Assembly: GCF_001194135.2 (NCBI RefSeq)
Contig: NC_068994.1
Span: 18,625,806-18,662,897 of the forward strand
Length of the DNA: 37,092 nucleotides
From: Octopus bimaculoides
Taxonomy: Eukaryota
Reading direction: 5' to 3'
In this document: positions 455 through 34,967 of the stretch, in pieces
How the letters are laid out: each line of letters begins with the position of its first letter
How positions within the stretch are numbered: the stretch's first letter is position 1
Notes under the pieces: model-generated
The model's database searches: none
The model's input: the letters and a program-made list of their open reading frames with translations, nothing else
What the model was told of the DNA's origin: nothing
Translations under genes and position numbers: made by a program

Positions 455-1213
455 GTAGGAGCAGGTGTTGGTTTGCTACCATATGGTTTTCAGTTAAGTC
501 TCACAGTTCAACACTTTGAACAAGTGTCTTTTACAATAGCCCCCATGCTAACCAGTGCCTTGAGAGAAAATTTGGTTGATGGAAACTGTGTGGAAGCCTG
601 TCACATGGAAGCCACTCTCCATCATCACCACTTGACAATGAGTATTGGTTTGTTTACATTTCCATGGCACCACCGTTCGAGCATGATCGTTACCAGCTTT
701 GCCTTCCTGGCACTTGTGCCGCAGCTTCACGTTCTTGGCACTTGTGCTGGTGGCACGTGAAAAGACATTCGAGTGAGATCTTTGCCAGATCGTTGCCAGT
801 GCCGCTGGACAGGCTCCTGTGCAGGTGGCACGTAAAATACACCATTTTGAGTGTGGCCGTTGCCAGTACCGCCTGACTTGCCTTCGTGCCAGTGGCACAT
901 AAAAAAGCACCCACCACACTCTCAGAGTGGTTGGTGTTAGGAAGGGCATCCAGCTGTAGAAACTCTGCCAAATCAGATTGGAGCCTGGTGTAGCCATCTG
1001 GTTCACCAGTCCTCAGTCAAATCGTCCAACCCATGCTAGCATGGAAAGCGGACGTTAAACGATGATGATGAACTTGGTACAACAAAAGAGACTGACAGAA
1101 TAAGTAGCAGACTTTAAAAACAAAAAAAGTACTGGAGTCACTTTGTTTGACTAAACCCTTCAAAGTAGCAGTTCTGCATGTCCATAGTCCAATGAACGAA
1201 ACAAGTAAAAGAT
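455..1213 (+). mobile_element. tRNA-derived SINE (family 1), degenerate, split by an insertion at 666-1070
   Basis: Head and middle (455-665, ending GTTTACATTTCCAT) and tail (1071-1213, AACTT...GAAACAAGTAAAAGATA) are collinear with the other family-1 copies, e.g. 19350-19716. Confidence 0.75.
666..1070 (+). mobile_element. 5'-truncated RTE-LINE 3'UTR-type retroelement with (GAT)n tail
   Basis: Ends CCAACCCATGCTAGCATGGAAAGCGGACGTTAAAC-GATGATGATG. Nearly identical to 36952-37092 (minus). A related tail follows an RTE ORF2 C-terminus at 12670-13245. Confidence 0.8.
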
Positions 1214-9317: not shown

Positions 9318-10232
9318 ATTAATAATGTGTCAAATGTGTCAATTAGCGGTGTTGTTGATAATTTTTTCCTTACCTCAATGACGCAGGCAACATATTAAAA
9401 GTCCCCTTATATAGAACTATATTTATAAAAAAGTATAGAACTATATAATCACCCTCAAATTTGAGAAACAAACACTCAACTTTTTTCTTTTAAAACTTCA
9501 TTGCACAAGATTGATACCATGAAATTCCTTGAATTGAGTTGTATCATTTAAGCTTAATTAAAATACAGCTTGTTTTTAAAATAAAAAAAGTTAATTATAC
9601 TTAAATCCAATTTTTTGCTTTACTCAAATTTTTCATGATATTTTACCTCACAACTTTTATGATATAAATTTTTGTTACATGGGAACAAAACTATGAAATT
9701 CTTCATGCTTTCTTCTATCACTGAAGCAAAGATAAATATATTTTGCTTTTAAAATAAAAAAAAGTTATTTAGATCTAAACTTGATTGGTGCTGTTACTTA
9801 CTCTCCTATAATGTTGCTACAAATTTTAATGTAAACGTTTTTCTACTGGATCAAATCTCAATTTGTTTATGCCAAAATGTAGCTAGGGACCATTCTGCTT
9901 CAAAAATGTTAACAGTTTTCAATTTGGTTAAGAACTGAATTAGCAACAAGCTCTGAAAGATGCTGCATGTGAATGAATTGCAGCCTTAAGAATATTATCC
10001 AACTACTATTGTAGTTGAATGATAACTATGGCTGTAGCATTGTTGAGTAAAGTACATACAACACTATGGAGAGGTAATACTTATCCCCACTTAAATATGG
10101 ATGTTCAGTTAGAATAAATTATATTACAGTAGACACCATGAAAAAAGCTCTTATTTTGGCTTTTGGTGCAGAATGCACTCTTGTTTATATTGCTAGTGGG
10201 AAGGTAAATCCCTGCAACCTCCAACACTGAGA

Positions 10233-10279
10233 CCACCAGATCACATGATTTCGACCTTCCTTGATTTCATCAATGATGG
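10233..10279 (-). ncRNA. Type I hammerhead ribozyme, copy 1
   Basis: Minus strand reads CCATCA-TTGATGA-AATC-AAGGAA-GGTC-GAAA-TCA-TG-TGA-T-C-TGGTGG. AUC cleavage triplet. The 10.1-11.1 pair is an A-C mismatch. Confidence 0.7.
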
Positions 10280-10593
10280 ATGCTTGACTGCTAGAGATAG
10301 CAGTGACTCATTTCCCTACCAACAATATATAGAATAACAGTGCCAGAACAGGTACTGGTGTCATGATTAGCCAATGAAATTGTTACAAAATATAGATTAA
10401 CAACAGAGGCAGTATTAATACCAAGAGGTAATATCTATCCTCACTTAAATGTGGATGTTCTGTCAGAACAAACTATACTGTTATAAATACCATGAGAAAA
10501 ACTCTCATATTGGCTTTTGGTGTAAAATGCAAAATGCACTCTTGTTTATATTGCTAGCAGGGAGATAAATCCTGGCAACCTCCAGCACCGAGA

Positions 10594-10640
10594 CCACCAG
10601 ATCAAGTGATTTCAACCTTCTTTGGTCTCATCAATGATGG
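10594..10640 (-). ncRNA. Type I hammerhead ribozyme, copy 2
   Basis: Minus strand reads CCATCA-TTGATGA-GACC-AAAGAA-GGTT-GAAA-TCA-CT-TGA-T-C-TGGTGG. All three stems form, AUC triplet, and stem I extends via GAG/CTC. Confidence 0.8.
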
Positions 10641-10879
10641 GCGCTCAACTGTTAGAAATAGCAGCGACACATCATCTCCCAACCCTGACACTGCTTCACT
10701 CAGTTTAAATGACTGACAAGATGTTAACTATTTACTTCCAGTTTCAGTGGCTAAAAGAAAGAGTATTCAGTTAAAAATGAAATAATTTGCTATACTTAAA
10801 CTATTGCACCACTATCAGCAAAACAATTTAAAAACAGAAAAAGAGTAAACTTGTTAATTCATAAGATCTATTGATTCGA

Positions 10880-11195
10880 AACATGCACATGTGCATGTGT
10901 GTTTGTATGTGTATGTGTGTGTGTGTGTGTGTGAGTGAGTGCATGTGTGAGAAAGTACATGCACTTGTGCATGCATATGTGCAAGTGAATGCATGAGTAT
11001 GTGTGAGTGAGTGCATATGAGTACATGCATGAGTGAGTGCATGTGTGAGGAATTACATGCATGAGTGTGTGTGTGAGTGAGGTAGTATGTGTGTAAGGGA
11101 GTACATGCATGTATGAGTGAGCGTATATGTCAAGGAACATGTGTGTGTGTGTGTGATGGAGTATGTATGTACTGTATGTGTGTGTAAGTGTGTGT
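10880..11195. repeat. Complex (TG)/(GAGT)/(GCAT) microsatellite array
   Basis: Repeated GTGAGTGCATG and GAGTACATGCATG units. Confidence 0.9.
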
Positions 11196-11419
11196 AAATT
11201 TTTGATTACAAACAAAAGGAGAAAGCATGAAATCCAGAAAGTAGAGTGTAAATATGTATCGCTATGTACAGATTATTCTTTTATCATTCACAGTTTCACT
11301 GGTCACATAAGAGTTAATTGGAATTAAAGACATGGTGTCTACAACAGTCAGCTGTTACACAAAGCAGTCATGAATTAAACTGAAGTGTATTTACATTCTT
11401 ATGCAGTTTATTATTTTTT

Positions 11420-12060
11420 ATCTTTCTTTCACTTTTTACTTGTTTCACCCATTATCATTATTCTATCACTGATAAGTTATGGGGCCATAAACAAAACTAG
11501 TTGCCAAGTGGCAGAGGGACAAACAGAAAGAGAGAGACACACACACATATAGTTTTTTTTATCCTTTTACTTGTTTCAATCATTTTACTGTGGCCATGCT
11601 GCAGCACTGCCTTGATCCTAGGACTTATATCTTAAGCCTAGTACTTATTTTATCGGTCCCTTTAGATGAACAGCTAAGTTACAGGGACATAAACACACTA
11701 ACACCAGTTGTCAAGTGAAGATGGCAGGGGGACAAATACAGACTCAAAGACACATACACACACACATACATACATATATGACGGGCTTCTTTCAGTTTCT
11801 GTCAACCAAATCCATTCACAGGGCTTTGGTCAGCCTGAGGCTAGAGTAGAAGACATTTGCTCAAGGTACCATGCAGTGAAACTGAATCTGGAACCATGTG
11901 GTTGGGAAGCAAGCTTCTTACCACACAGCTATGCCTGTGACAGATTTTTACAGTTTTCATTAACCAAATTTATTTACAAGGAATTGCTCAACTCAGGATA
12001 ATAGAAGACATTCATCCAAGATGCCATACAGTGGGGCTGAGCTCAAAACCACATGGTCAT
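11420..12060 (-). mobile_element. Cluster of SINE family 1 copies (near full-length 11557-11936 plus flanking partials)
   Basis: Tail TTTTACTTGTTTC, internal (CA/TA)n, and head ...CTTACCACACAGCTATGCCTG (reverse-complement A box). Confidence 0.8.
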
Positions 12061-12669
12061 ACCTGTACCTTATCACACCTAAAGTTTTTTGATATCTAAA
12101 TTTAATTTTGTTCTTTTAATTCACAGTATCTTGCGCATAAAAATATATATTTTTTACATAATGACATGCAGTCTGAAACACAAATATGCAAATTAATTTA
12201 TCTACCATGGTAGTAGCTTAATTACTAACTACTTATAAGTTGGACACAAGGTTATTGATTGGGGATATTTCTGAAGAGTGATCAACAAATAATGAAATGG
12301 TTCATCAGGTGACACTTTACCCTTTAGCACAGAGAGAATGTACTTACATTTTTTTTTATAGTTCATTATCACAACTAAGACTTTCTAATACATGTATGTA
12401 AGCACAAGGGTAGCTACATGGTTATGTTCACTTCAGTATCATGTGGTCAGTGGTTTGGTTCCACTCCCTAAACACTGTTGCTTTGTGCTCTATATTACAG
12501 TCACAAATTGACCAGTGTGAGTGAAACTGGTTAACAGAAACTGAAGAAACTTGTTGTATGTGCATGTGTGTGTGTATATGTTTATGGAAGTGGTGATCTT
12601 CATTTTTCTCTGACAACCATAGACCCTGATACTGAAAAACATGCGAAACTGCATCAGTCATAAGGATCT

Positions 12670-13245
12670 CATCATCATCCTTTAACGTCTGTTTTCTATG
12701 CTGGCATGGGTTGGATGGTTTGACCAGAGCTGGCAAGCAGGAGAGCTACACCAAGTTCCCGTCTGATTTGGCTTGGTTTCTACAGCTGGGTGCCCTTCCT
12801 AACACCAACCACCTTACAGTGTGTGACAGGTGCTTTTAACATGGCACTGGTATGGATACTTTTGCATGGCACCAGTATGAGTGCTTTCTACATGGCACCA
12901 GCTTTTTGCAGGCGGCCAATCCCCTTCATCAGGAGGAACAGCATTAACACTTCTGCTGTGGAAGACAGATCTTCTTGAGTATAGCAAGGAACCAGATATC
13001 TCGGTCCTTTGTCATTTCCTCTGTAAGGTTCAGTATCCTGTGACTGTCCTTCAGTACTTTGTTCCATGTCTCCCTCTTCCATGAGTTCCATCCACCCACC
13101 CACTTTGAGTGATCAGCACTTCTGTAAGGAGCTGTTGATATCCATCTGCACCACATGACCAAACCACCATAGACTTCTCTCATGCAGACTGTATCTAATT
13201 CCTCTCATGCCTAATTGTTTTTCTCAATGCACTAGCACTCCACAG
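12670..13245 (-). mobile_element. RTE-clade LINE 3' end (ORF2 C-terminus, 3'UTR and (GAT)n tail)
   Basis: GIRYSLHERSLWWFGHV (frameshifted) and RETWNKVLKDSHRILNLTEEMTKDRDIW, followed by a UTR ending GACGTTAAAGGATGATGATG. Confidence 0.85.
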
Positions 13246-14745: not shown

Positions 14746-15458
14746 TTTTATGCCTAATCCTTTACGTAAAATTATGACATTCATAAAACTATGAAGTCTG
14801 AAAATCATTTTTGAAATGAGAGAAGTATTACAAAAAGAAAGTTCCAGAAAATGCTTGGAAAGTTCTCTAAAGGTATACAACCATTGTGAAAATGACATGC
14901 AGCTTGTTCTATGTGGTCAACAAGCTGAAATGAAAGTATAATGAATGTAAGTCTAACAACACTATTCTTATTGTTCAGACAATCTCAAATGAGAAGCAGA
15001 AAAGACAATTTTCATACACAAGAGGTAGGTATATTTGTTTTGGTGAAAATCAAAACACCTCTAATATGAAGCTATTATATGTCAACTGCACTTATGTCAA
15101 ATCTAAATATAACAATTTTTATAGCATTTGCAAAAGCTATATTATGAAATGTAAACTGAGGGTATATTTAAATTTGAGTCCAATGCCAAGAAGTCCCATT
15201 TTAAAATGCAAATTTACAATCATTAAAATAAAGAAAAACTTGAATCTAAAACATTTTCAGGTTCAAGTATTTAAAATAAAAGGCTATTGTTTATATTTGG
15301 AGAACTGAATCTAGAATCCACTACATTCATTTCAGGGGACTGGAACTAACTCACCACTTTAGCTTTCAGAGTACTCTGTCGTCAAATTTAATATTTAATT
15401 ATTCACATTGTTTTGAATTAATCATGCATTATATCATAACTTCAAGATTTCAATAATT

Positions 15459-15745
15459 TATCTTCTATCTTATATCTTCTACTTGTTTCAGTCATTTGAC
15501 TGTGGCCATGCTTGAGCACTACCTTGAAGGTTTTTGGTTTTTTTGTCAGACGAATGGACCCCAATAGAATGAGCCTAGTATTTATTCTATTGGTCTCTTT
15601 TGCTGGACCACTAAGTTATGGGGACATAAACACACCGATACTGGTTGTCAACCAATGATGGGGGTACAAACACAGACACACAGTCATATATATACACATG
15701 GCAGGCTTCTTTCAGTTTCTGTCTATCAAAACTACTCACAAGGCT
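15459..15745 (-). mobile_element. SINE family 1, 3' two-thirds
   Basis: CTTGTTTCAGTCATTTGACTGTGGCCATGC...GGCTTCTTTCAGTTTC. Confidence 0.8.
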
Positions 15746-15763
15746 TACAAACACACATACACG

Positions 15764-16593
15764 CACGGTGCAGTGAATAAACTGTCATTTCATTTTAATG
15801 GATATATTTACCAAAATTACATAAAAATTTCTTGAAATACTAAAGAATAAATTTATTCAATATAACTGACATTGGCTTCAACCATGGCCTCCAGATAACT
15901 TTGGAATCTCCTGCAACTCTTCTTGTTTAAATTGGTAAATGCTGCTATAATCTTTGCCTTCAGTTTATCTTTGGTATTACCAGGAGTTTTGTGGGTCTCT
16001 CGCTCAACTGCACCCCCGCCCATATAAAAAACAAGAGAGTTGCAGTCTGGGGAATTAGGTGGAAAGATGTTAGGGGAGATGTGGTCGCAGAAATTGTCTG
16101 TCAGCCATGACTGGGTTCTCCTGCTTGTGTGGCATGGTGCAGAGTCCTGTTGCCAGACATAGGGTCTTCCAGCAGCCACTCTCCTGACCCAGGACAACAC
16201 TACCTCCTCCAGGCACTTGATGTAGGTCTCCGTCTTGAGTCAGAGGCCACGTGGGAAGATGAATGGAGGCATAATGTCACCATCACTAGTGATCACTCCA
16301 AACACTATGATGTTAACTGGATGCTTGATTTTTATCAATCTTGGTACATTTCCTCAGATCGACACCCAAACACTCTGAAATGTTCATTTTGGAACTTCCG
16401 GCACAAATGCCAAGTAGTACAGCATGTCGCTTCCAAATTTCTGGCAGAGTGAATTGCATCATGGTGCTGCTTTTCTCACAAACAGTGCCCAACTGACTCT
16501 ACTATACTGTGTAGTTGACAAAATCAAAAACAAACAATGCGCATGCGCAAAATTAAAATTATAAAATGGCAAGAATTTACCCATCACATCATG
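15764..16593 (-). mobile_element. Internally deleted Tc1/mariner element of the maT (DD37D) type
   Basis: Degenerate TIRs CACGGTGCAGTGAATAAA and TTTACCCATCACATCATG-TA, enclosing a transposase remnant. Confidence 0.85.
15853..16462 (-). pseudogene. DD37D (maT) transposase remnant
   Basis: VWQQDSAPCH...PPNSPDCNSLV. There are 37 residues between the QQD Asp and the final position, which is Val here (GTT, one change from GAT). The N-terminus MMQFTLPEIWKR joins directly to the catalytic region, with a frameshift and a stop. Confidence 0.85.
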
Positions 16594-19349: not shown

Positions 19350-19716
19350 AAATCTGGGGAATGGTTGTGTGATAAAAGTTTACTTCACAACCACATAGTT
19401 CTGGGTTCAATTCAACAGCATGGCACCTTGGGTCAACCAAAGCATTGTGAGTGGATTTGGTAGATGAAAACTGAAAAAAAGACCGTTGTGTGTGTGTGTG
19501 TGTGTGTGTGTGTTTATCTCCCACCACCACTTGACAACCTGTTTTGGTGCATTTATCTCCCCATAACTAAGCAGTTTGGCAAAAGATACAGATAGAATAA
19601 GTACCAGGATTAAAAAAAGTAAAAATAAATATTGGGGTTGATCTTTTCAACTAAAATTCTTCAAGACAGTGCCACAGCATGGCTGCAGTCTAATAACTGA
19701 AATAAGTAAAAGATAT
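19350..19716 (+). mobile_element. SINE family 1, near full length
   Basis: A-box-like TGGTTGTGTGA, B-box-like GGGTTCAATTC, internal (GT)n, tail GAAATAAGTAAAAGATA. Confidence 0.85.
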
Positions 19717-19863
19717 ATACATATATACATAAATATATAAGGATATTATTGTTAATAATTTACAATAATATCAATGGCTAGAACCCCCTCAATTTCACAC
19801 TTGTGTACAAGTGAAAACTATGGTTTTGAGTTGTTTTGATTGCTATCTTTAGCATGCTGGTGC

Positions 19864-19906
<43 letters not shown>

Positions 19907-20209
19907 NNNNNNNNNNNNNNNNNNNNNNNNNNNNNNNNNNNNNNNNNNNNNNNNNNNNNNNNNNNNNNNNNNNNTGCATGTATACATACATATATGTACA
20001 TACCTACATCTACATGTATATGTATATCCGAGTACAGGACGTCAAAAAAAGGAACGGGAACATAAACAAAGCACAAAAAACGGACTTTTTTTTATGGACA
20101 ACAGAATGAACACATAGGAAAACAGACGAGCCACTTATGGAACTATATATATATAAAACTGTGGTTTTGAGTCATTTTCACTGCTATCTTTAGCATGCTG
20201 GTGCTACAA

Positions 20210-24009: not shown

Positions 24010-24626
24010 TTACACACACACACACACACACACACACATATCTATGCTTAGATGTGTTTGTGTTGCATTTGTTTGCCACTATTACTTGACAATGTTAGTT
24101 GACAGATTTTCAAAAGAGACTGAAAATAGATATCAGACTTTAAAAAAAAAAAAAGAAGTACTGGAGTTGATTTAAACCCTTCAAGTTGGTGCCACTGCAT
24201 GGTCGTAGTCCAATGATTGCAACAAGTAAATTAAAGATAAAAGATGGCACTGTATGTAATGAGTCAGTTGTGGTATTGACTTTAATATGAATTTCAGTCT
24301 TTAGACTTTTCTTCAATGAAATGTACAGGNNNNNNNNNNNNNNNNNNNNNNNNNNNNNGGGTTGTACTTTTTAGAAATCACATGACATTTTATTTTACTA
24401 TTATTGTGTGTCACAGGAGACAATGGATTGTCTGTGATAGAAATATTACATTTTTATTGTACTTTCATATTCATAGAAATTCTAAAAGTAATAAATATCA
24501 TTTTATTTGCATTTCTGTAAATTCAGATATATGAAGAATACAAAGAGGTAGCAATTCAAGAATTCCAACATGGATGAAAGCACTTGGTGTTGACTAATGA
24601 AGTCACAAAGGGAAAATGTAGGTTGT

Positions 24627-24985
24627 CAAATGGAAGAATAAACTGTCGATGTTTGAAATTCTAAAAGATGACTTTACAATGTGAAATCTAGTGCAAGCTC
24701 ATTTCAGGAACTGAAAATTGTTGTGGACAGTAATATCAGACACACAAAGATGCAACTTCAAATATAGATGTTATGAAGTTTGATGGCTTATGTGATAGGA
24801 ACATCAAATGAAAGAATAAGCTGTCGCTGTTCGAAATTCTAAAAGTTAATTTTACAATGCAAAAATCTAGGGCATATCTCATTTCAGGAACTGTAAACTG
24901 TTGTGGATAGTAATGCCAAACACTCAAAGATGCAAGTTCAAATATAGACGTTATGGAGTCTGATGATTAATTTGATAGAAACAAC
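24627..24985 (+). repeat. 178-bp tandem duplication (2 copies) inside the Helitron remnant
   Basis: CAAATG.AAGAATAA.CTGTCG at 24627 and 24805. CTCATTTCAGGAACTG and CAAAGATGCAA.TTCAAATATAGA also occur twice. Confidence 0.9.
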
Positions 24986-25276
24986 AATTTTTTTTAATGA
25001 ATTTGGAATCTGTTCTGCACCTCAAATTTAAAATTTGTGCATTTCAGTATTGTTGTTATGTGGAATCTCAGATCAATAAGAATTTTTTAAAAATCACAAA
25101 TTGTTTATGGCAGATCATCAACAGTAGCATCCTACAGATAATAAAAATGTTAGACAAGCATACTATCTCAGACTTTTTAAACTTTCTGCCTTCAAAATGG
25201 AACTTTCCTTCAGCAGCTCATCTTTGAGTTGTCTGCAGCAGATACATAAAGAAATGAAGTGCTTGCATGCACATGT

Positions 25277-27429: not shown

Positions 27430-27685
27430 ATTAACTCTATCAGTCTCTTTTGCTGAAATGCTAAGTTACAGGGATGCAAACAAACCAACACTGGTTGTCA
27501 AGCAGAGGGTGTGTGAAAAAAACAGTCACAAAAACACATACAAACATGTGCATGTGTGACAGGTTTCTACACAGTTTCTGTCCACCAAATTGGTCTGGAT
27601 CTATAAGAAGATACTTGCCCAAGGTACCACACAGTAGGATTGAACCCAATACCATGTGGTCGCAAAGCAAGTTTCTTAACTACAA
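27430..27685 (-). mobile_element. SINE family 1, degenerate
   Basis: CTAAGTTACAGGG..CAAACCAACACTGGTTGTCAAG and GATACTTGCCCAAGGTACCAC..GAACCC..CCATGTGG. Confidence 0.75.
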
Positions 27686-30419: not shown

Positions 30420-30730
30420 GCCTGTCTTCTACTCATTTCAGCCATTGGATTACATCCATGTTGTAGTGTGGTCTTGAAGGGTTCAGTGAAACAAATTGAC
30501 CCCAGTATTTATTTTTTTAAAGTCCAATACTTATTCGATTGGTCTCTTTAACTGAACTTCTAAGTTATGGCAATGTAAACAAACCAACACCAGTTGTCAA
30601 GCACTGGTGGGGGACAAACATGCACAAACACACATACAAAGTGAGCTTCTTTCAGTTTCCCTCTACCAAATCCACTCACAAGGCTTTGGTCAGCTCAAGA
30701 CTATAGTAGAACACTTAACCAAGATGCCAC
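30420..30730 (-). mobile_element. SINE family 1, degenerate
   Basis: CTTCTTTCAGTTTCC.TCTACCAAATCCACTCACAAGGCTTTGGTCAG and ACCAGTTGTCAAG. Confidence 0.75.
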
Positions 30731-32834: not shown

Positions 32835-33000
32835 TGTGCCATGTTAAAAGCACCCAGCACACACAGTAAAGTGCTTGGCGTTAGGAAAGACAACTAGCCA
32901 TAGAAACTAAACCAAATTAGACTGGAATCTGCTGCAGCTCTTTTGCTTGCCAGCTCTGGTCAAACAATCAAATCCATGCCACCATAGAAAATGGATGGTA
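32835..33000 (+). mobile_element. Old copy of the RTE-3'UTR-type repeat
   Basis: AAAAGCACCCA..TTGGCGTTAGGAA..TAGAAACT..CTGGTCAAAC..CCATGCCA.CAT.GAAA, collinear with 895-1055. Confidence 0.65.
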
Positions 33001-34665: not shown

Positions 34666-34698
<33 letters not shown>

Positions 34699-34707
34699 CA
34701 CACACAC

Positions 34708-34967
34708 TCTTTTACTTGTTTCAGTGATTTGATTGTGGCCATGCTGGAGCACCGCCTTTAGTTGAAGAAATCGACCCCAGGACTTATTCTTTGTAAGCCT
34801 AGTACTTATTCTATTGGTTTCTTTTGCTGAACCGCTAAGTTACGGGGACATAAAAACACCAGCATCGGTTGTCAAGCGATGTTGGGGCACAAACACAGAC
34901 ACACAAACATATATATATATATACGACAGGCTTCTTTCAGTCTCCGTCTACCAAATCCACTCACAAG
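34708..34967 (-). mobile_element. Young-looking SINE family 1 copy, cut by an assembly gap
   Basis: Retains many CpGs (GCACCGCC, GAACCGCTAAGTTACGGGGAC, AGCATCGGTTGTCAAGCGATG). Confidence 0.9.

What the first reader, a model, noticed from the sequence alone, without database searches (positions are those of the whole stretch)
10071..10680. Tandem type I hammerhead ribozymes 361 nt apart: candidate retrozyme / circRNA-producing unit
Seen: two ~250-bp direct repeats (about 80% identical) separated by ~107 bp of unique sequence. On the minus strand each holds a full type I hammerhead (10233-10279 and 10594-10640): 6-bp stem I CCATCA/TGGTGG, catalytic box, 4-bp stem II, GAAA, stem III and an AUC triplet. 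Predicted cuts fall at 10600/10599 and 10239/10238, releasing a 361-nt monomer with no coding capacity. The copies differ at different stem II positions and point to an ancestral perfect GACC/GGTC stem. Established: non-autonomous metazoan retrozymes (newt satellite 2, schistosome SM-alpha, cnidarian and bivalve repeats) are tandem units of a few hundred nt delimited by type I hammerheads and processed into circular RNAs; Penelope-like elements also carry hammerheads in their terminal repeats. Inference: this is such a unit in a probable cephalopod genome. I cannot tell from the sequence whether the family is already described.
Basis: partly seen in the sequence, partly recalled or inferred. 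Interest (0 to 1): 0.9.

Follow-up and report, generated by a model that had tools for sequence, protein, structure and literature searches.

The report
Decayed hammerhead retrozyme-like tandem repeat
A 615-bp, 1.7-unit tandem repeat in a probable octopus genome carries two hammerhead-ribozyme-like motifs of the kind that animal 'retrozyme' mobile elements use to cut themselves into small RNA circles, but both copies have a changed catalytic core and look like old, probably inactive relics of an already known kind of element.

Summary
Units 10070-10311 and 10424-10684 are 83% identical over aligned bases and lie 354-361 bp apart. Each carries a type I hammerhead-shaped motif on the minus strand. 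Helix I is 6 bp, helix II 4 bp, helix III short and palindromic, followed by GAAA and AUC.

The motifs are not "full" hammerheads. Both cores read UUGAUGA, so invariant C3 is U. The 10.1-11.1 pair is G.U in one copy and A x C in the other. No Rfam family reaches its gathering score. The best match is Hammerhead_HH9 at 26.5 bits against a cut-off of 52 (E=0.014 window-wide); the second copy scores 15 bits.

Chance is still unlikely. My relaxed descriptors expect 0.003-0.02 hits per simulated window. Helix I also continues into a 48-bp helix that closes the predicted 361-nt monomer (z about -4 to -4.5).

Unit size, 37% GC, absence of coding capacity and the self-paired circle all fit metazoan non-LTR retrozymes. 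The two units differ by K2P 0.21, and the ribozyme is no better conserved than the rest of the unit.

Most likely this is a decayed retrozyme-type insertion. I could retrieve no family members, so whether the family consensus has C or U at position 3, and whether the family is active, remains untested. It is a known kind of element, of low to moderate interest.

The parts
10070..10684 (-). Whole array: 1.7 units of a 354-361 bp non-coding repeat. Read on the minus strand it is a 5'-truncated unit followed by a full unit.
   Evidence: the repeat finder families D3/D4. Self-BLAST finds no other copy in the window. The flanks are not homologous to the unit.
10424..10684 (-). Upstream unit R2 (261 bp). 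It is cut at its 5' side near 10684-10690 and contains a 7-nt internal duplication (GCATTTT x2).
   Evidence: Alignments. Its 5' hairpin arm is incomplete, so the local fold gives only z=-0.8.
10312..10423 (-). Its 3' part belongs to the 5' arm of the long helix around the downstream ribozyme.
10070..10311 (-). Downstream repeat R1 (242 bp).
10594..10640 (-). Hammerhead-like motif of R2: CCAUCA-UUGAUGA-GACC(AAAGAA)GGUU-GAAA-UC(ACUU)GAUC-UGGUGG. U3 is at 10634. G10.1 (10627) pairs with U11.1 (10614) as a wobble. C17 is at 10600.
   Evidence: Sequence. Rfam HH9 match 10648-10575, 26.5 bits, below the cut-off of 52. Own descriptor.
10233..10279 (-). Hammerhead-like motif of R1: CCAUCA-UUGAUGA-AAUC(AAGGAA)GGUC-GAAA-UC(AUGU)GAUC-UGGUGG. 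U3 is at 10273. A10.1 (10266) x C11.1 (10253) is a mismatch. C17 is at 10239.
   Evidence: Sequence. Rfam HH9 match of 15.0 bits, E=1.5. Pair counts.
10239..10599 (-). Predicted 361-nt monomer between the two would-be cleavage sites. GC is 37%.
   Evidence: Linear MFE -107 kcal/mol, z=-3.9. As a circle, -102.2 kcal/mol, z=-4.5, 67% paired. The plus-strand RNA folds less well, z=-2.8.
10547..10599 (-). 5' arm of the 48-bp terminal helix, lying immediately 3' of the R2 cleavage site and including the 3' strand of helix I. The equivalent arm of R1 is about 10186-10238.
   Evidence: 48 pairs (21 AU, 18 GC, 9 GU). Duplex energy is -57.7 kcal/mol, against -22.8 +/- 4.2 with a shuffled partner.
10274..10329 (-). 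3' arm of the same helix, lying immediately 5' of the R1 ribozyme and including the 5' strand of helix I.
   Evidence: (R1 hairpin 10340-10169, z=-4.1).

Best explanation
This is an old, decayed insertion of a hammerhead-bearing tandem repeat of the animal non-LTR retrozyme type.

Ancestral mechanism (inferred from the family's published biology, not shown here):
1. The minus strand was transcribed through adjacent units.
2. Helix III is too weak to fold alone, so two neighbouring ribozyme domains paired through their palindromic helix III strands into a double hammerhead.
3. Cleavage after the AUC triplets released a monomer of about 361 nt.
4. The monomer's ends were held together by a 48-bp helix continuing helix I.
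5. A host tRNA ligase closed it into a small, highly self-paired circular RNA.
6. A reverse transcriptase, probably from a Penelope-like element, copied the circle into tandem cDNA that was integrated.

Present state (shown by the sequence):
- 1.7 units remain, and they differ at 17% of aligned sites.
- Both ribozymes have U instead of C at core position 3.
- One has lost the G10.1-C11.1 pair and the other has weakened it.
- The locus is therefore most likely a relic that cleaves very poorly or not at all.
For: Motif geometry: helix I 6 bp, helix II 4 bp with a 6-nt loop, short palindromic helix III, and all core positions correct except C3 in both copies. This matches the 'canonical' metazoan type I architecture described in PMC4209133.

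Motif significance: a sub-threshold but non-random covariance-model hit (HH9, E=0.014 window-wide). Own descriptors expect 0.003-0.02 hits per simulated window.

Helix III: the hairpin alone has no stability (0 kcal/mol). Inter-copy helix III duplexes are -3.7, -8.6 and -7.5 kcal/mol. This is the dimer design of newt, axolotl and PLE hammerheads (PMC4209133, PMC7229834).

Retrozyme criteria of PMC7229834: unit length of 354-361 bp lies within 150-450 bp; the array is a dimer-type array; GC is 37%; there is no ORF with homologues; and the predicted circle is highly self-paired (z=-4.5).

Terminal helix: the 48-bp helix scores -57.7 against -22.8 +/- 4.2 kcal/mol for shuffled partners, and it contains 9 G.U pairs. 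The minus strand folds better than the plus strand.

Decay: K2P is 0.21 with 36 transitions to 6 transversions. The ribozyme is not more conserved than the rest of the unit (6 of 47 positions, against 18.5% elsewhere, P=0.21). Window CpG observed/expected is 0.22.

Helix changes between the copies are four one-sided transitions that keep pairing and one break, with no double compensation.
Against:
- U3 is shared by both units, so the common ancestor of the two units already had it. Independent C-to-T change at the same site in both would have a probability of about 0.5-1% by my estimate. This fits awkwardly with a template RNA that had to self-cleave.
- There is no target-site duplication.
- No Penelope-like reverse transcriptase or GIY-YIG relic was found in nearby ORFs, and no PLE-type minimal hammerhead in the window.
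- The hammerhead fold lies 5-7.5 kcal/mol above the MFE of the local hairpins.
- There is no transcription evidence.
Confidence: 0.65

Rival explanations
1. The locus, or its family, is still a working ribozyme with a non-canonical U3.G8 wobble core. It cleaves as a double hammerhead formed between the two copies and yields a 361-nt circular RNA today.
For: - Both units keep U3 together with every other invariant core base.
- Helix I and helix III are identical in both units.
- The inter-copy helix III duplex is stable, at -7.5 kcal/mol for R2 x R1.
- The monomer ends are clamped by a 48-bp helix.
- Natural core variants that retain some activity are known, including U3-A8 covariation and A6C (PMC3088659, PMC4209133, PMC7151607).
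Against: - C3-G8 is a Watson-Crick pair in the active site. The known natural variant changes both partners (U3-A8), but here G8 is unchanged.
- Mutations at most core positions cause a drastic loss of activity (PMC3088659). From my own recollection of the mutational literature, C3U alone costs two to three orders of magnitude.
- The downstream copy also has an A10.1 x C11.1 mismatch.
- With 17% divergence, the ribozyme is not protected relative to its flanks (P=0.21).
- Both copies are far below Rfam thresholds.
Confidence: 0.1
2. The A-B-A pattern is not a truncated tandem. It is either a pair of terminal repeats of a miniature LTR-type element (plant-retrozyme-like: hammerhead in each LTR, short internal region), or the pseudo-LTR remnant of a Penelope-like element whose body has been deleted.
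For: - Two repeats of equal extent (242 and 261 bp), each with a hammerhead-like motif, flank 112 bp of single-copy sequence.
- The single-copy part begins with TGGTAT, the first 6 nt of the tRNA-Met primer-binding site of plant retrozymes (own recollection).
- PLEs carry hammerheads in pseudo-LTRs formed by partial tandems (PMC8557442, PMC4209133).
- Animal retrozymes are reported to be related to PLE pLTRs (bioRxiv 10.64898/2026.07.22.740005).
Against: - There is no target-site duplication and no TG...CA termini.
- The PBS-like match stops after 6 nt, and its complement does not look like a tRNA 3' end.
- The long helix around the downstream ribozyme runs about 18 nt (10312-10329) into the 'internal' segment. 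The repeat boundary therefore cuts a structural unit, as expected for 5' truncation of a tandem unit.
- PLE hammerheads are minimal variants with a long helix II (7-8 bp), a short helix I and no helix III (PMC4209133). This motif has the canonical 6/4/short geometry.
- The window has no PLE-type core and no RT or GIY-YIG signal in nearby ORFs.
Confidence: 0.12
3. The hammerhead resemblance is a coincidence inside an ordinary local tandem duplication of a palindromic, hairpin-forming repeat. No ribozyme was ever involved.
For: - Core position 3 is wrong in both copies.
- No Rfam gathering-level hit exists.
- The two motifs are not independent observations, because they are copies of each other.
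- The hammerhead fold is not the MFE of either local hairpin.
- A third, clearly weak descriptor hit at 12266-12311 shows that relaxed descriptors can fire spuriously.
Against: - 0.003-0.02 hits are expected per simulated window, and HH9 has E=0.014 across all 4227 families and the whole window.
- Ten of the 11 invariant core bases (C3, U4, G5, A6, G8, A9, G12, A13, A14, A15.1, U16.1) are correct, and position 17 meets the non-G rule.
- The core sits exactly at the three-way junction on top of a 48-bp helix.
- Helix lengths of 6 and 4 bp with a 6-nt loop 2 match the metazoan canon (PMC4209133).
- The inferred ancestor has a perfect helix II.
- Unit length, GC content and the self-paired circle fit retrozymes.
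Confidence: 0.08

Closest known systems
Metazoan non-LTR retrozymes (Cervera & de la Pena 2020, PMC7229834; coral, mussel, axolotl)
   Same: Tandem non-coding units within the 150-450 bp range. One type I hammerhead-shaped motif per unit. Low GC (37%). No LTR, PBS or PPT. The predicted monomer circle is highly self-paired. The array is of dimer size.
   Different: The core has U3 instead of C3 in both units, and helix II is damaged. Only 1.7 units are present, with about 17% divergence. No expression or cleavage data exist, and no family consensus is available. No cephalopod example is mentioned in the retrozyme papers I read.
Newt satellite 2 / axolotl HHR_Amex hammerheads (double-hammerhead cleavage; Forster et al. 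1988, cited in PMC6155905 and PMC7229834)
   Same: Helix III is too weak to fold alone and is palindromic. Two tandem copies can therefore build an extended helix III (-7.5 to -8.6 kcal/mol here). Unit size is about 330-350 nt.
   Different: Those ribozymes have the intact CUGAUGA core and proven dimer cleavage. Their arrays reach hundreds of units and about 10^5 copies.
Rfam Hammerhead_HH9 (RF02275), the intronic amniote type I hammerhead
   Same: It is the best-scoring Rfam model. It shares the 6-bp helix I, the 4-bp helix II with a 6-nt A-rich loop, the short helix III, and a distal extension of helix I beyond an internal loop.
   Different: The scores are 26.5 and 15 bits against a gathering score of 52. 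There is no unpaired stretch on the 5' strand of helix I, and position 3 is U. The locus is a repeat unit, not a conserved single-copy intronic element.
Minimal hammerheads in pseudo-LTRs of Penelope-like elements (PMC4209133; Lunse et al. 2017, cited in PMC7761336)
   Same: Hammerheads sit in direct repeats created by partial tandem insertion. They are thought to act as dimers. Core variants are tolerated (U3-A8 in Cercyon).
   Different: PLE motifs have a 7-8 bp helix II, a 4-5 bp helix I and no helix III. They flank an RT-endonuclease ORF about 3 kb long. None of this is found here.
Plant LTR retrozymes (PMC4918200)
   Same: Two direct repeats, each with a hammerhead, flank a short non-coding region. 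The RNA is processed to a circle.
   Different: Plant elements use type III hammerheads, LTRs of about 350 bp, a tRNA-Met PBS, a PPT, 4-bp TSDs and GC above 55%. None of these is met here.

Membership tests
Hammerhead ribozyme, type I (Rfam clan CL00010) | Three helices around a junction, with helix I open-ended and helices II and III closed by loops | tested here: met
   18 proposed pairs, with 97.2% of cells paired in register against 22-44% when slid. However, the hammerhead fold lies 5-7.5 kcal/mol above the MFE of the local hairpins.
Hammerhead ribozyme, type I (Rfam clan CL00010) | Invariant core C3 U4 G5 A6 N7 G8 A9 / G12 A13 A14 / A15.1-U16.1 / H17 | tested here: not met
   Both copies read UUGAUGA: U3 at 10634 and 10273, with G8 unchanged. 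All other core positions are correct. A descriptor requiring C3 gives 0 hits.
Hammerhead ribozyme, type I (Rfam clan CL00010) | G10.1-C11.1 pair at the base of helix II | tested here: not met
   R2 has a G.U wobble and R1 an A x C mismatch. Parsimony gives an ancestral G-C.
Hammerhead ribozyme, type I (Rfam clan CL00010) | Score at or above a family's curated gathering threshold | tested here: not met
   No hit at gathering thresholds in the window. HH9 scores 26.5 and 15.0 bits against 52.
Hammerhead ribozyme, type I (Rfam clan CL00010) | Mg2+-dependent self-cleavage 3' of position 17 | not testable with these tools
   Requires in vitro transcription of monomeric and dimeric constructs.
Metazoan non-LTR retrozyme (PMC7229834) | Short tandem repeats with a 150-450 bp monomer, from dimers to large multimers | tested here: met
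   1.7 units of 354-361 bp. This is a partial dimer only.
Metazoan non-LTR retrozyme (PMC7229834) | One canonical type I hammerhead per unit | tested here: inconclusive
   The geometry is canonical, but the core carries U3 and helix II is damaged. The family consensus is unknown.
Metazoan non-LTR retrozyme (PMC7229834) | Low GC (below 45-50%), non-coding, no LTR, PBS or PPT | tested here: met
   GC is 37%. Frames are at most 53 aa without homologues. There are no TG..CA ends and no credible PBS by sequence inspection.
Metazoan non-LTR retrozyme (PMC7229834) | Monomer RNA predicted to be a stable, highly self-paired circle | tested here: met
   Circular MFE is -102.2 kcal/mol, z=-4.5, 67% paired. 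The closing helix has 48 bp.
Metazoan non-LTR retrozyme (PMC7229834) | Multicopy dispersed family in the genome, co-occurring with Penelope-like elements | not testable with these tools
   There is no second locus in the 37-kb window, and no eukaryotic genome collection was available. Protein-space, viral, metagenome and prokaryote scans gave nothing relevant. PLEs are reported in cephalopods (PMC8557442, PMC6962438).
Metazoan non-LTR retrozyme (PMC7229834) | Expression as circular RNA of unit length | not testable with these tools
   No transcriptome access.
Penelope-like element pseudo-LTR | Minimal hammerhead (long helix II, no helix III) in repeats flanking an RT/GIY-YIG ORF | tested here: not met
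   The motif has 6/4/short-III geometry. The window has no CUGANGA...GAAA core with a helix II of 5 bp or more. There are no Pfam hits in neighbouring ORFs. Only 112 bp lies between the repeats.
Plant-type LTR retrozyme | Type III hammerhead in LTRs, tRNA-Met PBS, PPT, 4-bp TSD | tested here: not met
   The topology is type I. Only TGGTAT (6 of 12 nt) resembles the PBS. There is no TSD: the longest shared 7-mer lies about 40 nt from each end, and a match at least that long occurs in 23% of shuffles.

The most novel reading that the evidence does not exclude
The octopus family to which this locus belongs has U3 paired as a wobble with G8 in its master copies. It is nevertheless processed, as a double hammerhead formed between adjacent units, into an abundant 361-nt circular RNA. 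That would be a natural single-sided C3U core variant and the first characterised cephalopod retrozyme.
Probability: 0.08. Interest if true: 0.5.

Novelty: new member of a known kind. Interest (0 to 1): 0.25.

Why it matters
If the family is confirmed genome-wide, it would add cephalopods to the animals known to carry hammerhead-bearing retrozyme repeats, and it would give a sequence handle for looking for small ribozyme-derived circular RNAs in octopus tissues. The only point of wider interest is the shared U3. If the family consensus also has U3 and still cleaves, it would be a natural test of how much the C3-G8 pair matters in a dimeric hammerhead. As it stands, the locus is an example of how retrozyme insertions decay, and a warning that a hammerhead 'seen by eye' can fail at a single core base.

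Tried and rejected
1. Rfam at gathering thresholds over the whole window gave nothing. Only relaxed E-value runs gave HH9. The other relaxed hits are microsatellite artefacts (mir-297 and similar).

2. Searches for family members elsewhere all failed:
- A chimeric query of all open frames of the unit against 5.8 billion proteins gave no hit.
- A hammerhead pattern in viral contigs gave 0 hits.
- A looser pattern in metagenome contigs gave 4 hits. All lie in GC-richer, coding-like DNA without a helix I partner, so they are chance matches.
- The 25-nt invariant block gave 0 hits in prokaryotic genomes.
- Exact-product look-ups of window ORFs and of the Octopus protein P0023 were not on record.

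3. Organism identification:
- The mariner-like ORF has hits of only 43-67% identity, and those that carry an organism name are arthropods. This is uninformative.
- A repeat-derived ORF gave a single hit, Octopus bimaculoides A0A0L8HKR0, 25 of 26 residues identical. This is weak support for an octopus.

4. A TSD search and a test for a longer array by aligning the flanks to the single-copy segment were both negative.

5. Covariation between the two copies has too little power. There are no double changes, and column-wise mapping of the long helix is upset by indels.

6. A Pfam scan of 10 neighbouring ORFs for RT or GIY-YIG found nothing. A scan for PLE-type minimal hammerhead cores also found nothing.

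7. TRF does not list the array at score 150 or above. I assume, without testing it, that this is because only 1.7 copies are present.

8. Papers giving the quantitative effect of C3U (PMC1986816, PMC2733889) are not held. The size of the defect therefore rests on my recollection and on the general statement in PMC3088659.
Full report
**What is in the sequence**

The region 10070-10684 holds two direct repeats, 10070-10311 and 10424-10684. Their start-to-start spacing is 354-361 bp and their identity 80-82% (repeat finder; self-BLAST). A global alignment gives 242 aligned positions with 200 identities, 36 transitions, 6 transversions and 19 gap columns. That corresponds to p=0.174 and K2P=0.207.

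Between the repeats lie 112 bp (10312-10423) that occur once. No other copy of any part of the unit exists in the 37-kb window. The flanks on either side are not homologous to the single-copy segment. The array is therefore 1.7 units long. On the minus strand it reads as a 5'-truncated unit (R2, 10684->10424) followed by a complete unit (10423->10070, ending in R1).

The window has 33.5% GC, a CpG observed/expected ratio of 0.22 and three runs of N. It is crowded with SINE-like repeats, which is typical of a methylated animal genome. The only database match to a repeat-derived ORF of the window is an Octopus bimaculoides protein, with 25 of 26 residues identical.

**The hammerhead motifs**

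CCAUCA-UUGAUGA-[helix II]-GAAA-UC(4-nt loop)GAUC-UGGUGG

- Helix I is 6 bp, including one G.U pair.
- Loop 2 is 6 nt.
- Helix III is 3 bp with a 4-nt loop.
- The cleavage triplet is AUC, with C17 at 10600 and 10239. The predicted monomer is 10599->10239, 361 nt.

These geometries are the 'canonical' metazoan type I architecture described by Cervera & de la Pena (PMC4209133): helix I of 6 bp, helix II of 4 bp, and a short helix III with a palindromic loop.

Two things contradict the description 'full hammerhead':
- The first core base is U, not the invariant C3, in both copies (10634 and 10273), while its partner G8 is unchanged.
- The conserved G10.1-C11.1 pair is G.U in R2 and an A x C mismatch in R1.

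The three helix II differences are all transitions.

**Covariance models and chance**

No Rfam family reaches its gathering score anywhere in the window. With relaxed thresholds the best model is Hammerhead_HH9:
- R2 scores 26.5 bits over 10648-10575. E is 3e-4 in an 801-nt search and 0.014 for the whole window on both strands against all 4227 families.
- R1 scores 15.0 bits with E=1.5.
- The gathering score is 52.

My own descriptor with C3 required finds nothing. With Y3 allowed it finds both copies. First-order Markov simulations of the window give 0.003 hits per window when a perfect 3-bp helix II is required, and 0.02 when a 4-bp helix II with one mismatch is allowed.

In register, 97% of pair cells are standard pairs, against 22-44% when the 3' partners are slid by 1-3 columns. 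The motif is therefore more than chance, but it is a defective or non-canonical hammerhead.

Helix I does not end after 6 bp. The 53 nt 3' of the R2 cut (10599->10547) pair with the 56 nt 5' of the R1 core (10329->10274) in a 48-bp helix of 21 AU, 18 GC and 9 GU pairs. Its duplex energy is -57.7 kcal/mol, against -22.8 +/- 4.2 for shuffled partners.

Fold statistics support the same picture:
- The 361-nt monomer folds at -107 kcal/mol, z=-3.9.
- As a circle it folds at -102.2 kcal/mol, z=-4.5, with 67% of bases paired.
- The plus-strand RNA folds less well, z=-2.8. This is consistent with the G.U pairs and with the minus strand being the relevant one.
- The hairpin around R1 (10340->10169) has z=-4.1.
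- The hairpin around R2 has only z=-0.8, because its 5' arm is cut off by the array boundary.

The helix runs into the 'unique spacer'. This argues that the spacer and the repeat form one structural unit, and that the upstream unit is simply truncated.

**Helix III and dimer action**

The helix III hairpin has no predicted stability on its own (0 kcal/mol). The helix III strands of two copies can instead pair with each other:
- R1 x R1 forms 10 continuous pairs, -8.6 kcal/mol.
- R2 x R1 gives -7.5 kcal/mol.
- R2 x R2 gives -3.7 kcal/mol.

This is the double-hammerhead design known from newt and axolotl repeats and from PLE hammerheads (PMC4209133, PMC6155905, PMC7229834).

**Is the ribozyme under constraint or alive?**

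- The 47-nt motif has 6 differences between the copies, against 18.5% divergence elsewhere in the unit. That is not significantly fewer (P=0.21).
- Changes in helices are four one-sided transitions that keep pairing and one break. None is a double compensation. With two sequences this has little power.
- The hammerhead fold lies 5-7.5 kcal/mol above the MFE of the local hairpins. The UGAUGA box can pair with the helix III strand instead.
[quoted passage not shown] Natural covariation to U3-A8 is known, and most core mutations cause a drastic loss of activity (PMC3088659, PMC4209133).
- From my own recollection of the mutational literature, C3U alone costs two to three orders of magnitude. I could not retrieve the primary papers.
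- Both units share U3. Per-lineage transition probability is under about 0.1, so independent origin is unlikely (roughly 0.5-1%, my estimate). The common ancestor of the two units therefore already carried U3.
- It cannot be decided here whether that ancestor was a mutated genomic copy later duplicated at the DNA level, or an RNA that was nevertheless processed.

**Comparison with known systems**

The locus meets the descriptive criteria for metazoan non-LTR retrozymes (PMC7229834):
- a monomer of 150-450 bp in tandem;
- low GC (37%);
- no coding capacity;
- no LTR, PBS or PPT;
- a highly self-paired predicted circle.

It fails the strict hammerhead core test. Three defining properties could not be tested: a multicopy family, circular RNA, and cleavage.

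It does not look like a PLE pseudo-LTR. PLE hammerheads have a long helix II and no helix III, and they flank an RT-EN ORF (PMC4209133). The window has no such core, and nearby ORFs give no RT or GIY-YIG signal.

It does not look like a plant-type LTR retrozyme either. The topology is type I, there is no TSD, and the PBS resemblance is only 6 nt.

A recent preprint argues that animal retrozymes derive from PLE pLTRs (10.64898/2026.07.22.740005). PLEs occur in cephalopods (PMC8557442, PMC6962438). The giant squid genome paper lists 235 Rfam Hammerhead_1 loci (PMC6962438). Hammerheads in cephalopod genomes are therefore already on record, although the retrozyme papers I read do not mention cephalopods.

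**Verdict**

The most likely reading (about 0.65) is a decayed 1.7-unit insertion of a retrozyme-type, hammerhead-bearing repeat that no longer cleaves efficiently.

The rivals are:
- a still-active U3.G8 variant acting as a dimer (about 0.1);
- an LTR-like or PLE-pLTR remnant (about 0.12);
- coincidence (about 0.08).

The decisive data could not be obtained with the collections available. They are the family consensus at position 3, copy number, helix covariation, junction reads, and cleavage of the native dimer against a U3C revertant. The locus is a new member of a known kind, of low to moderate interest.

Noticed in passing
window 12266-12311 (+): A third hit to my relaxed hammerhead descriptor, this one with a canonical CUGAAGA box. 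Helix I has three G.U pairs out of five, helix II has a mismatch and a G.U at 10.1-11.1, and helix III is 3 bp. There is no Rfam hit at E<=1, and the fold is no better than shuffles (z=+1.2). It is probably a chance match.
   Followed up: partly
window 15856-16239 (-): An open frame of 128 aa (115 aa from the GTG start at 16200) resembling the C-terminal half of a Tc1/mariner-type DDE transposase. Identity to database proteins is 43-67%; those with an organism name are arthropods, and three hits carry PF13358. It is a decayed DNA-transposon copy.
   Followed up: partly
window 11564-11935, 15456-15746, 19358-19739, 27430-27678, 30425-30714, 34679-34967, 36490-36717 and others: Many copies of a SINE-like interspersed repeat of about 250-300 bp, 66-76% identical to each other, on both strands. 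The hammerhead unit is not part of this family.
   Followed up: partly
window 548-1071 (-), 12666-12975 (+), 32836-32991, 36948-37092: A second interspersed repeat. One copy has a 152-aa open frame. A 26-aa stretch of it is 96% identical to part of an Octopus bimaculoides gene model (UniRef A0A0L8HKR0, Sec1-family Pfam hit), presumably an exonised repeat. This is the only clue to the organism.
   Followed up: partly
window 24626-24987: Another tandem duplication: two 180-bp units, 83% identical (TRF score 510). None of my scans found a hammerhead or other Rfam signal in it. Its nature is unknown.
   Followed up: no
window 10876-11215: A degenerate (TG/CA)n-rich microsatellite block begins about 190 bp upstream (in the minus-strand sense) of the array. 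Some Penelope-like elements prefer microsatellite targets (PMC8557442), but the block is not adjacent to the array boundary.
   Followed up: no
window 10185-10209 and 10546-10570: A 25-nt block (minus strand CTAGCAATATAAACAAGAGTGCATT) is identical in both units despite 17% overall divergence. It forms the distal 3' arm of the long helix. A run of that length is not by itself significant at this divergence (my estimate is about 0.2).
   Followed up: partly
window 12947-13204 (-): An 86-aa frame ending ...EEMTKDRDIWFLAILKK... that recalls, from memory, the C-terminal tail of non-LTR retrotransposon ORF2 proteins. There is no Pfam hit.
   Followed up: partly
window 19907-19974, 24330-24358, 34968-35629: Three runs of N (68, 29 and 662 bases), which are assembly gaps. 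None is near the finding.
   Followed up: yes
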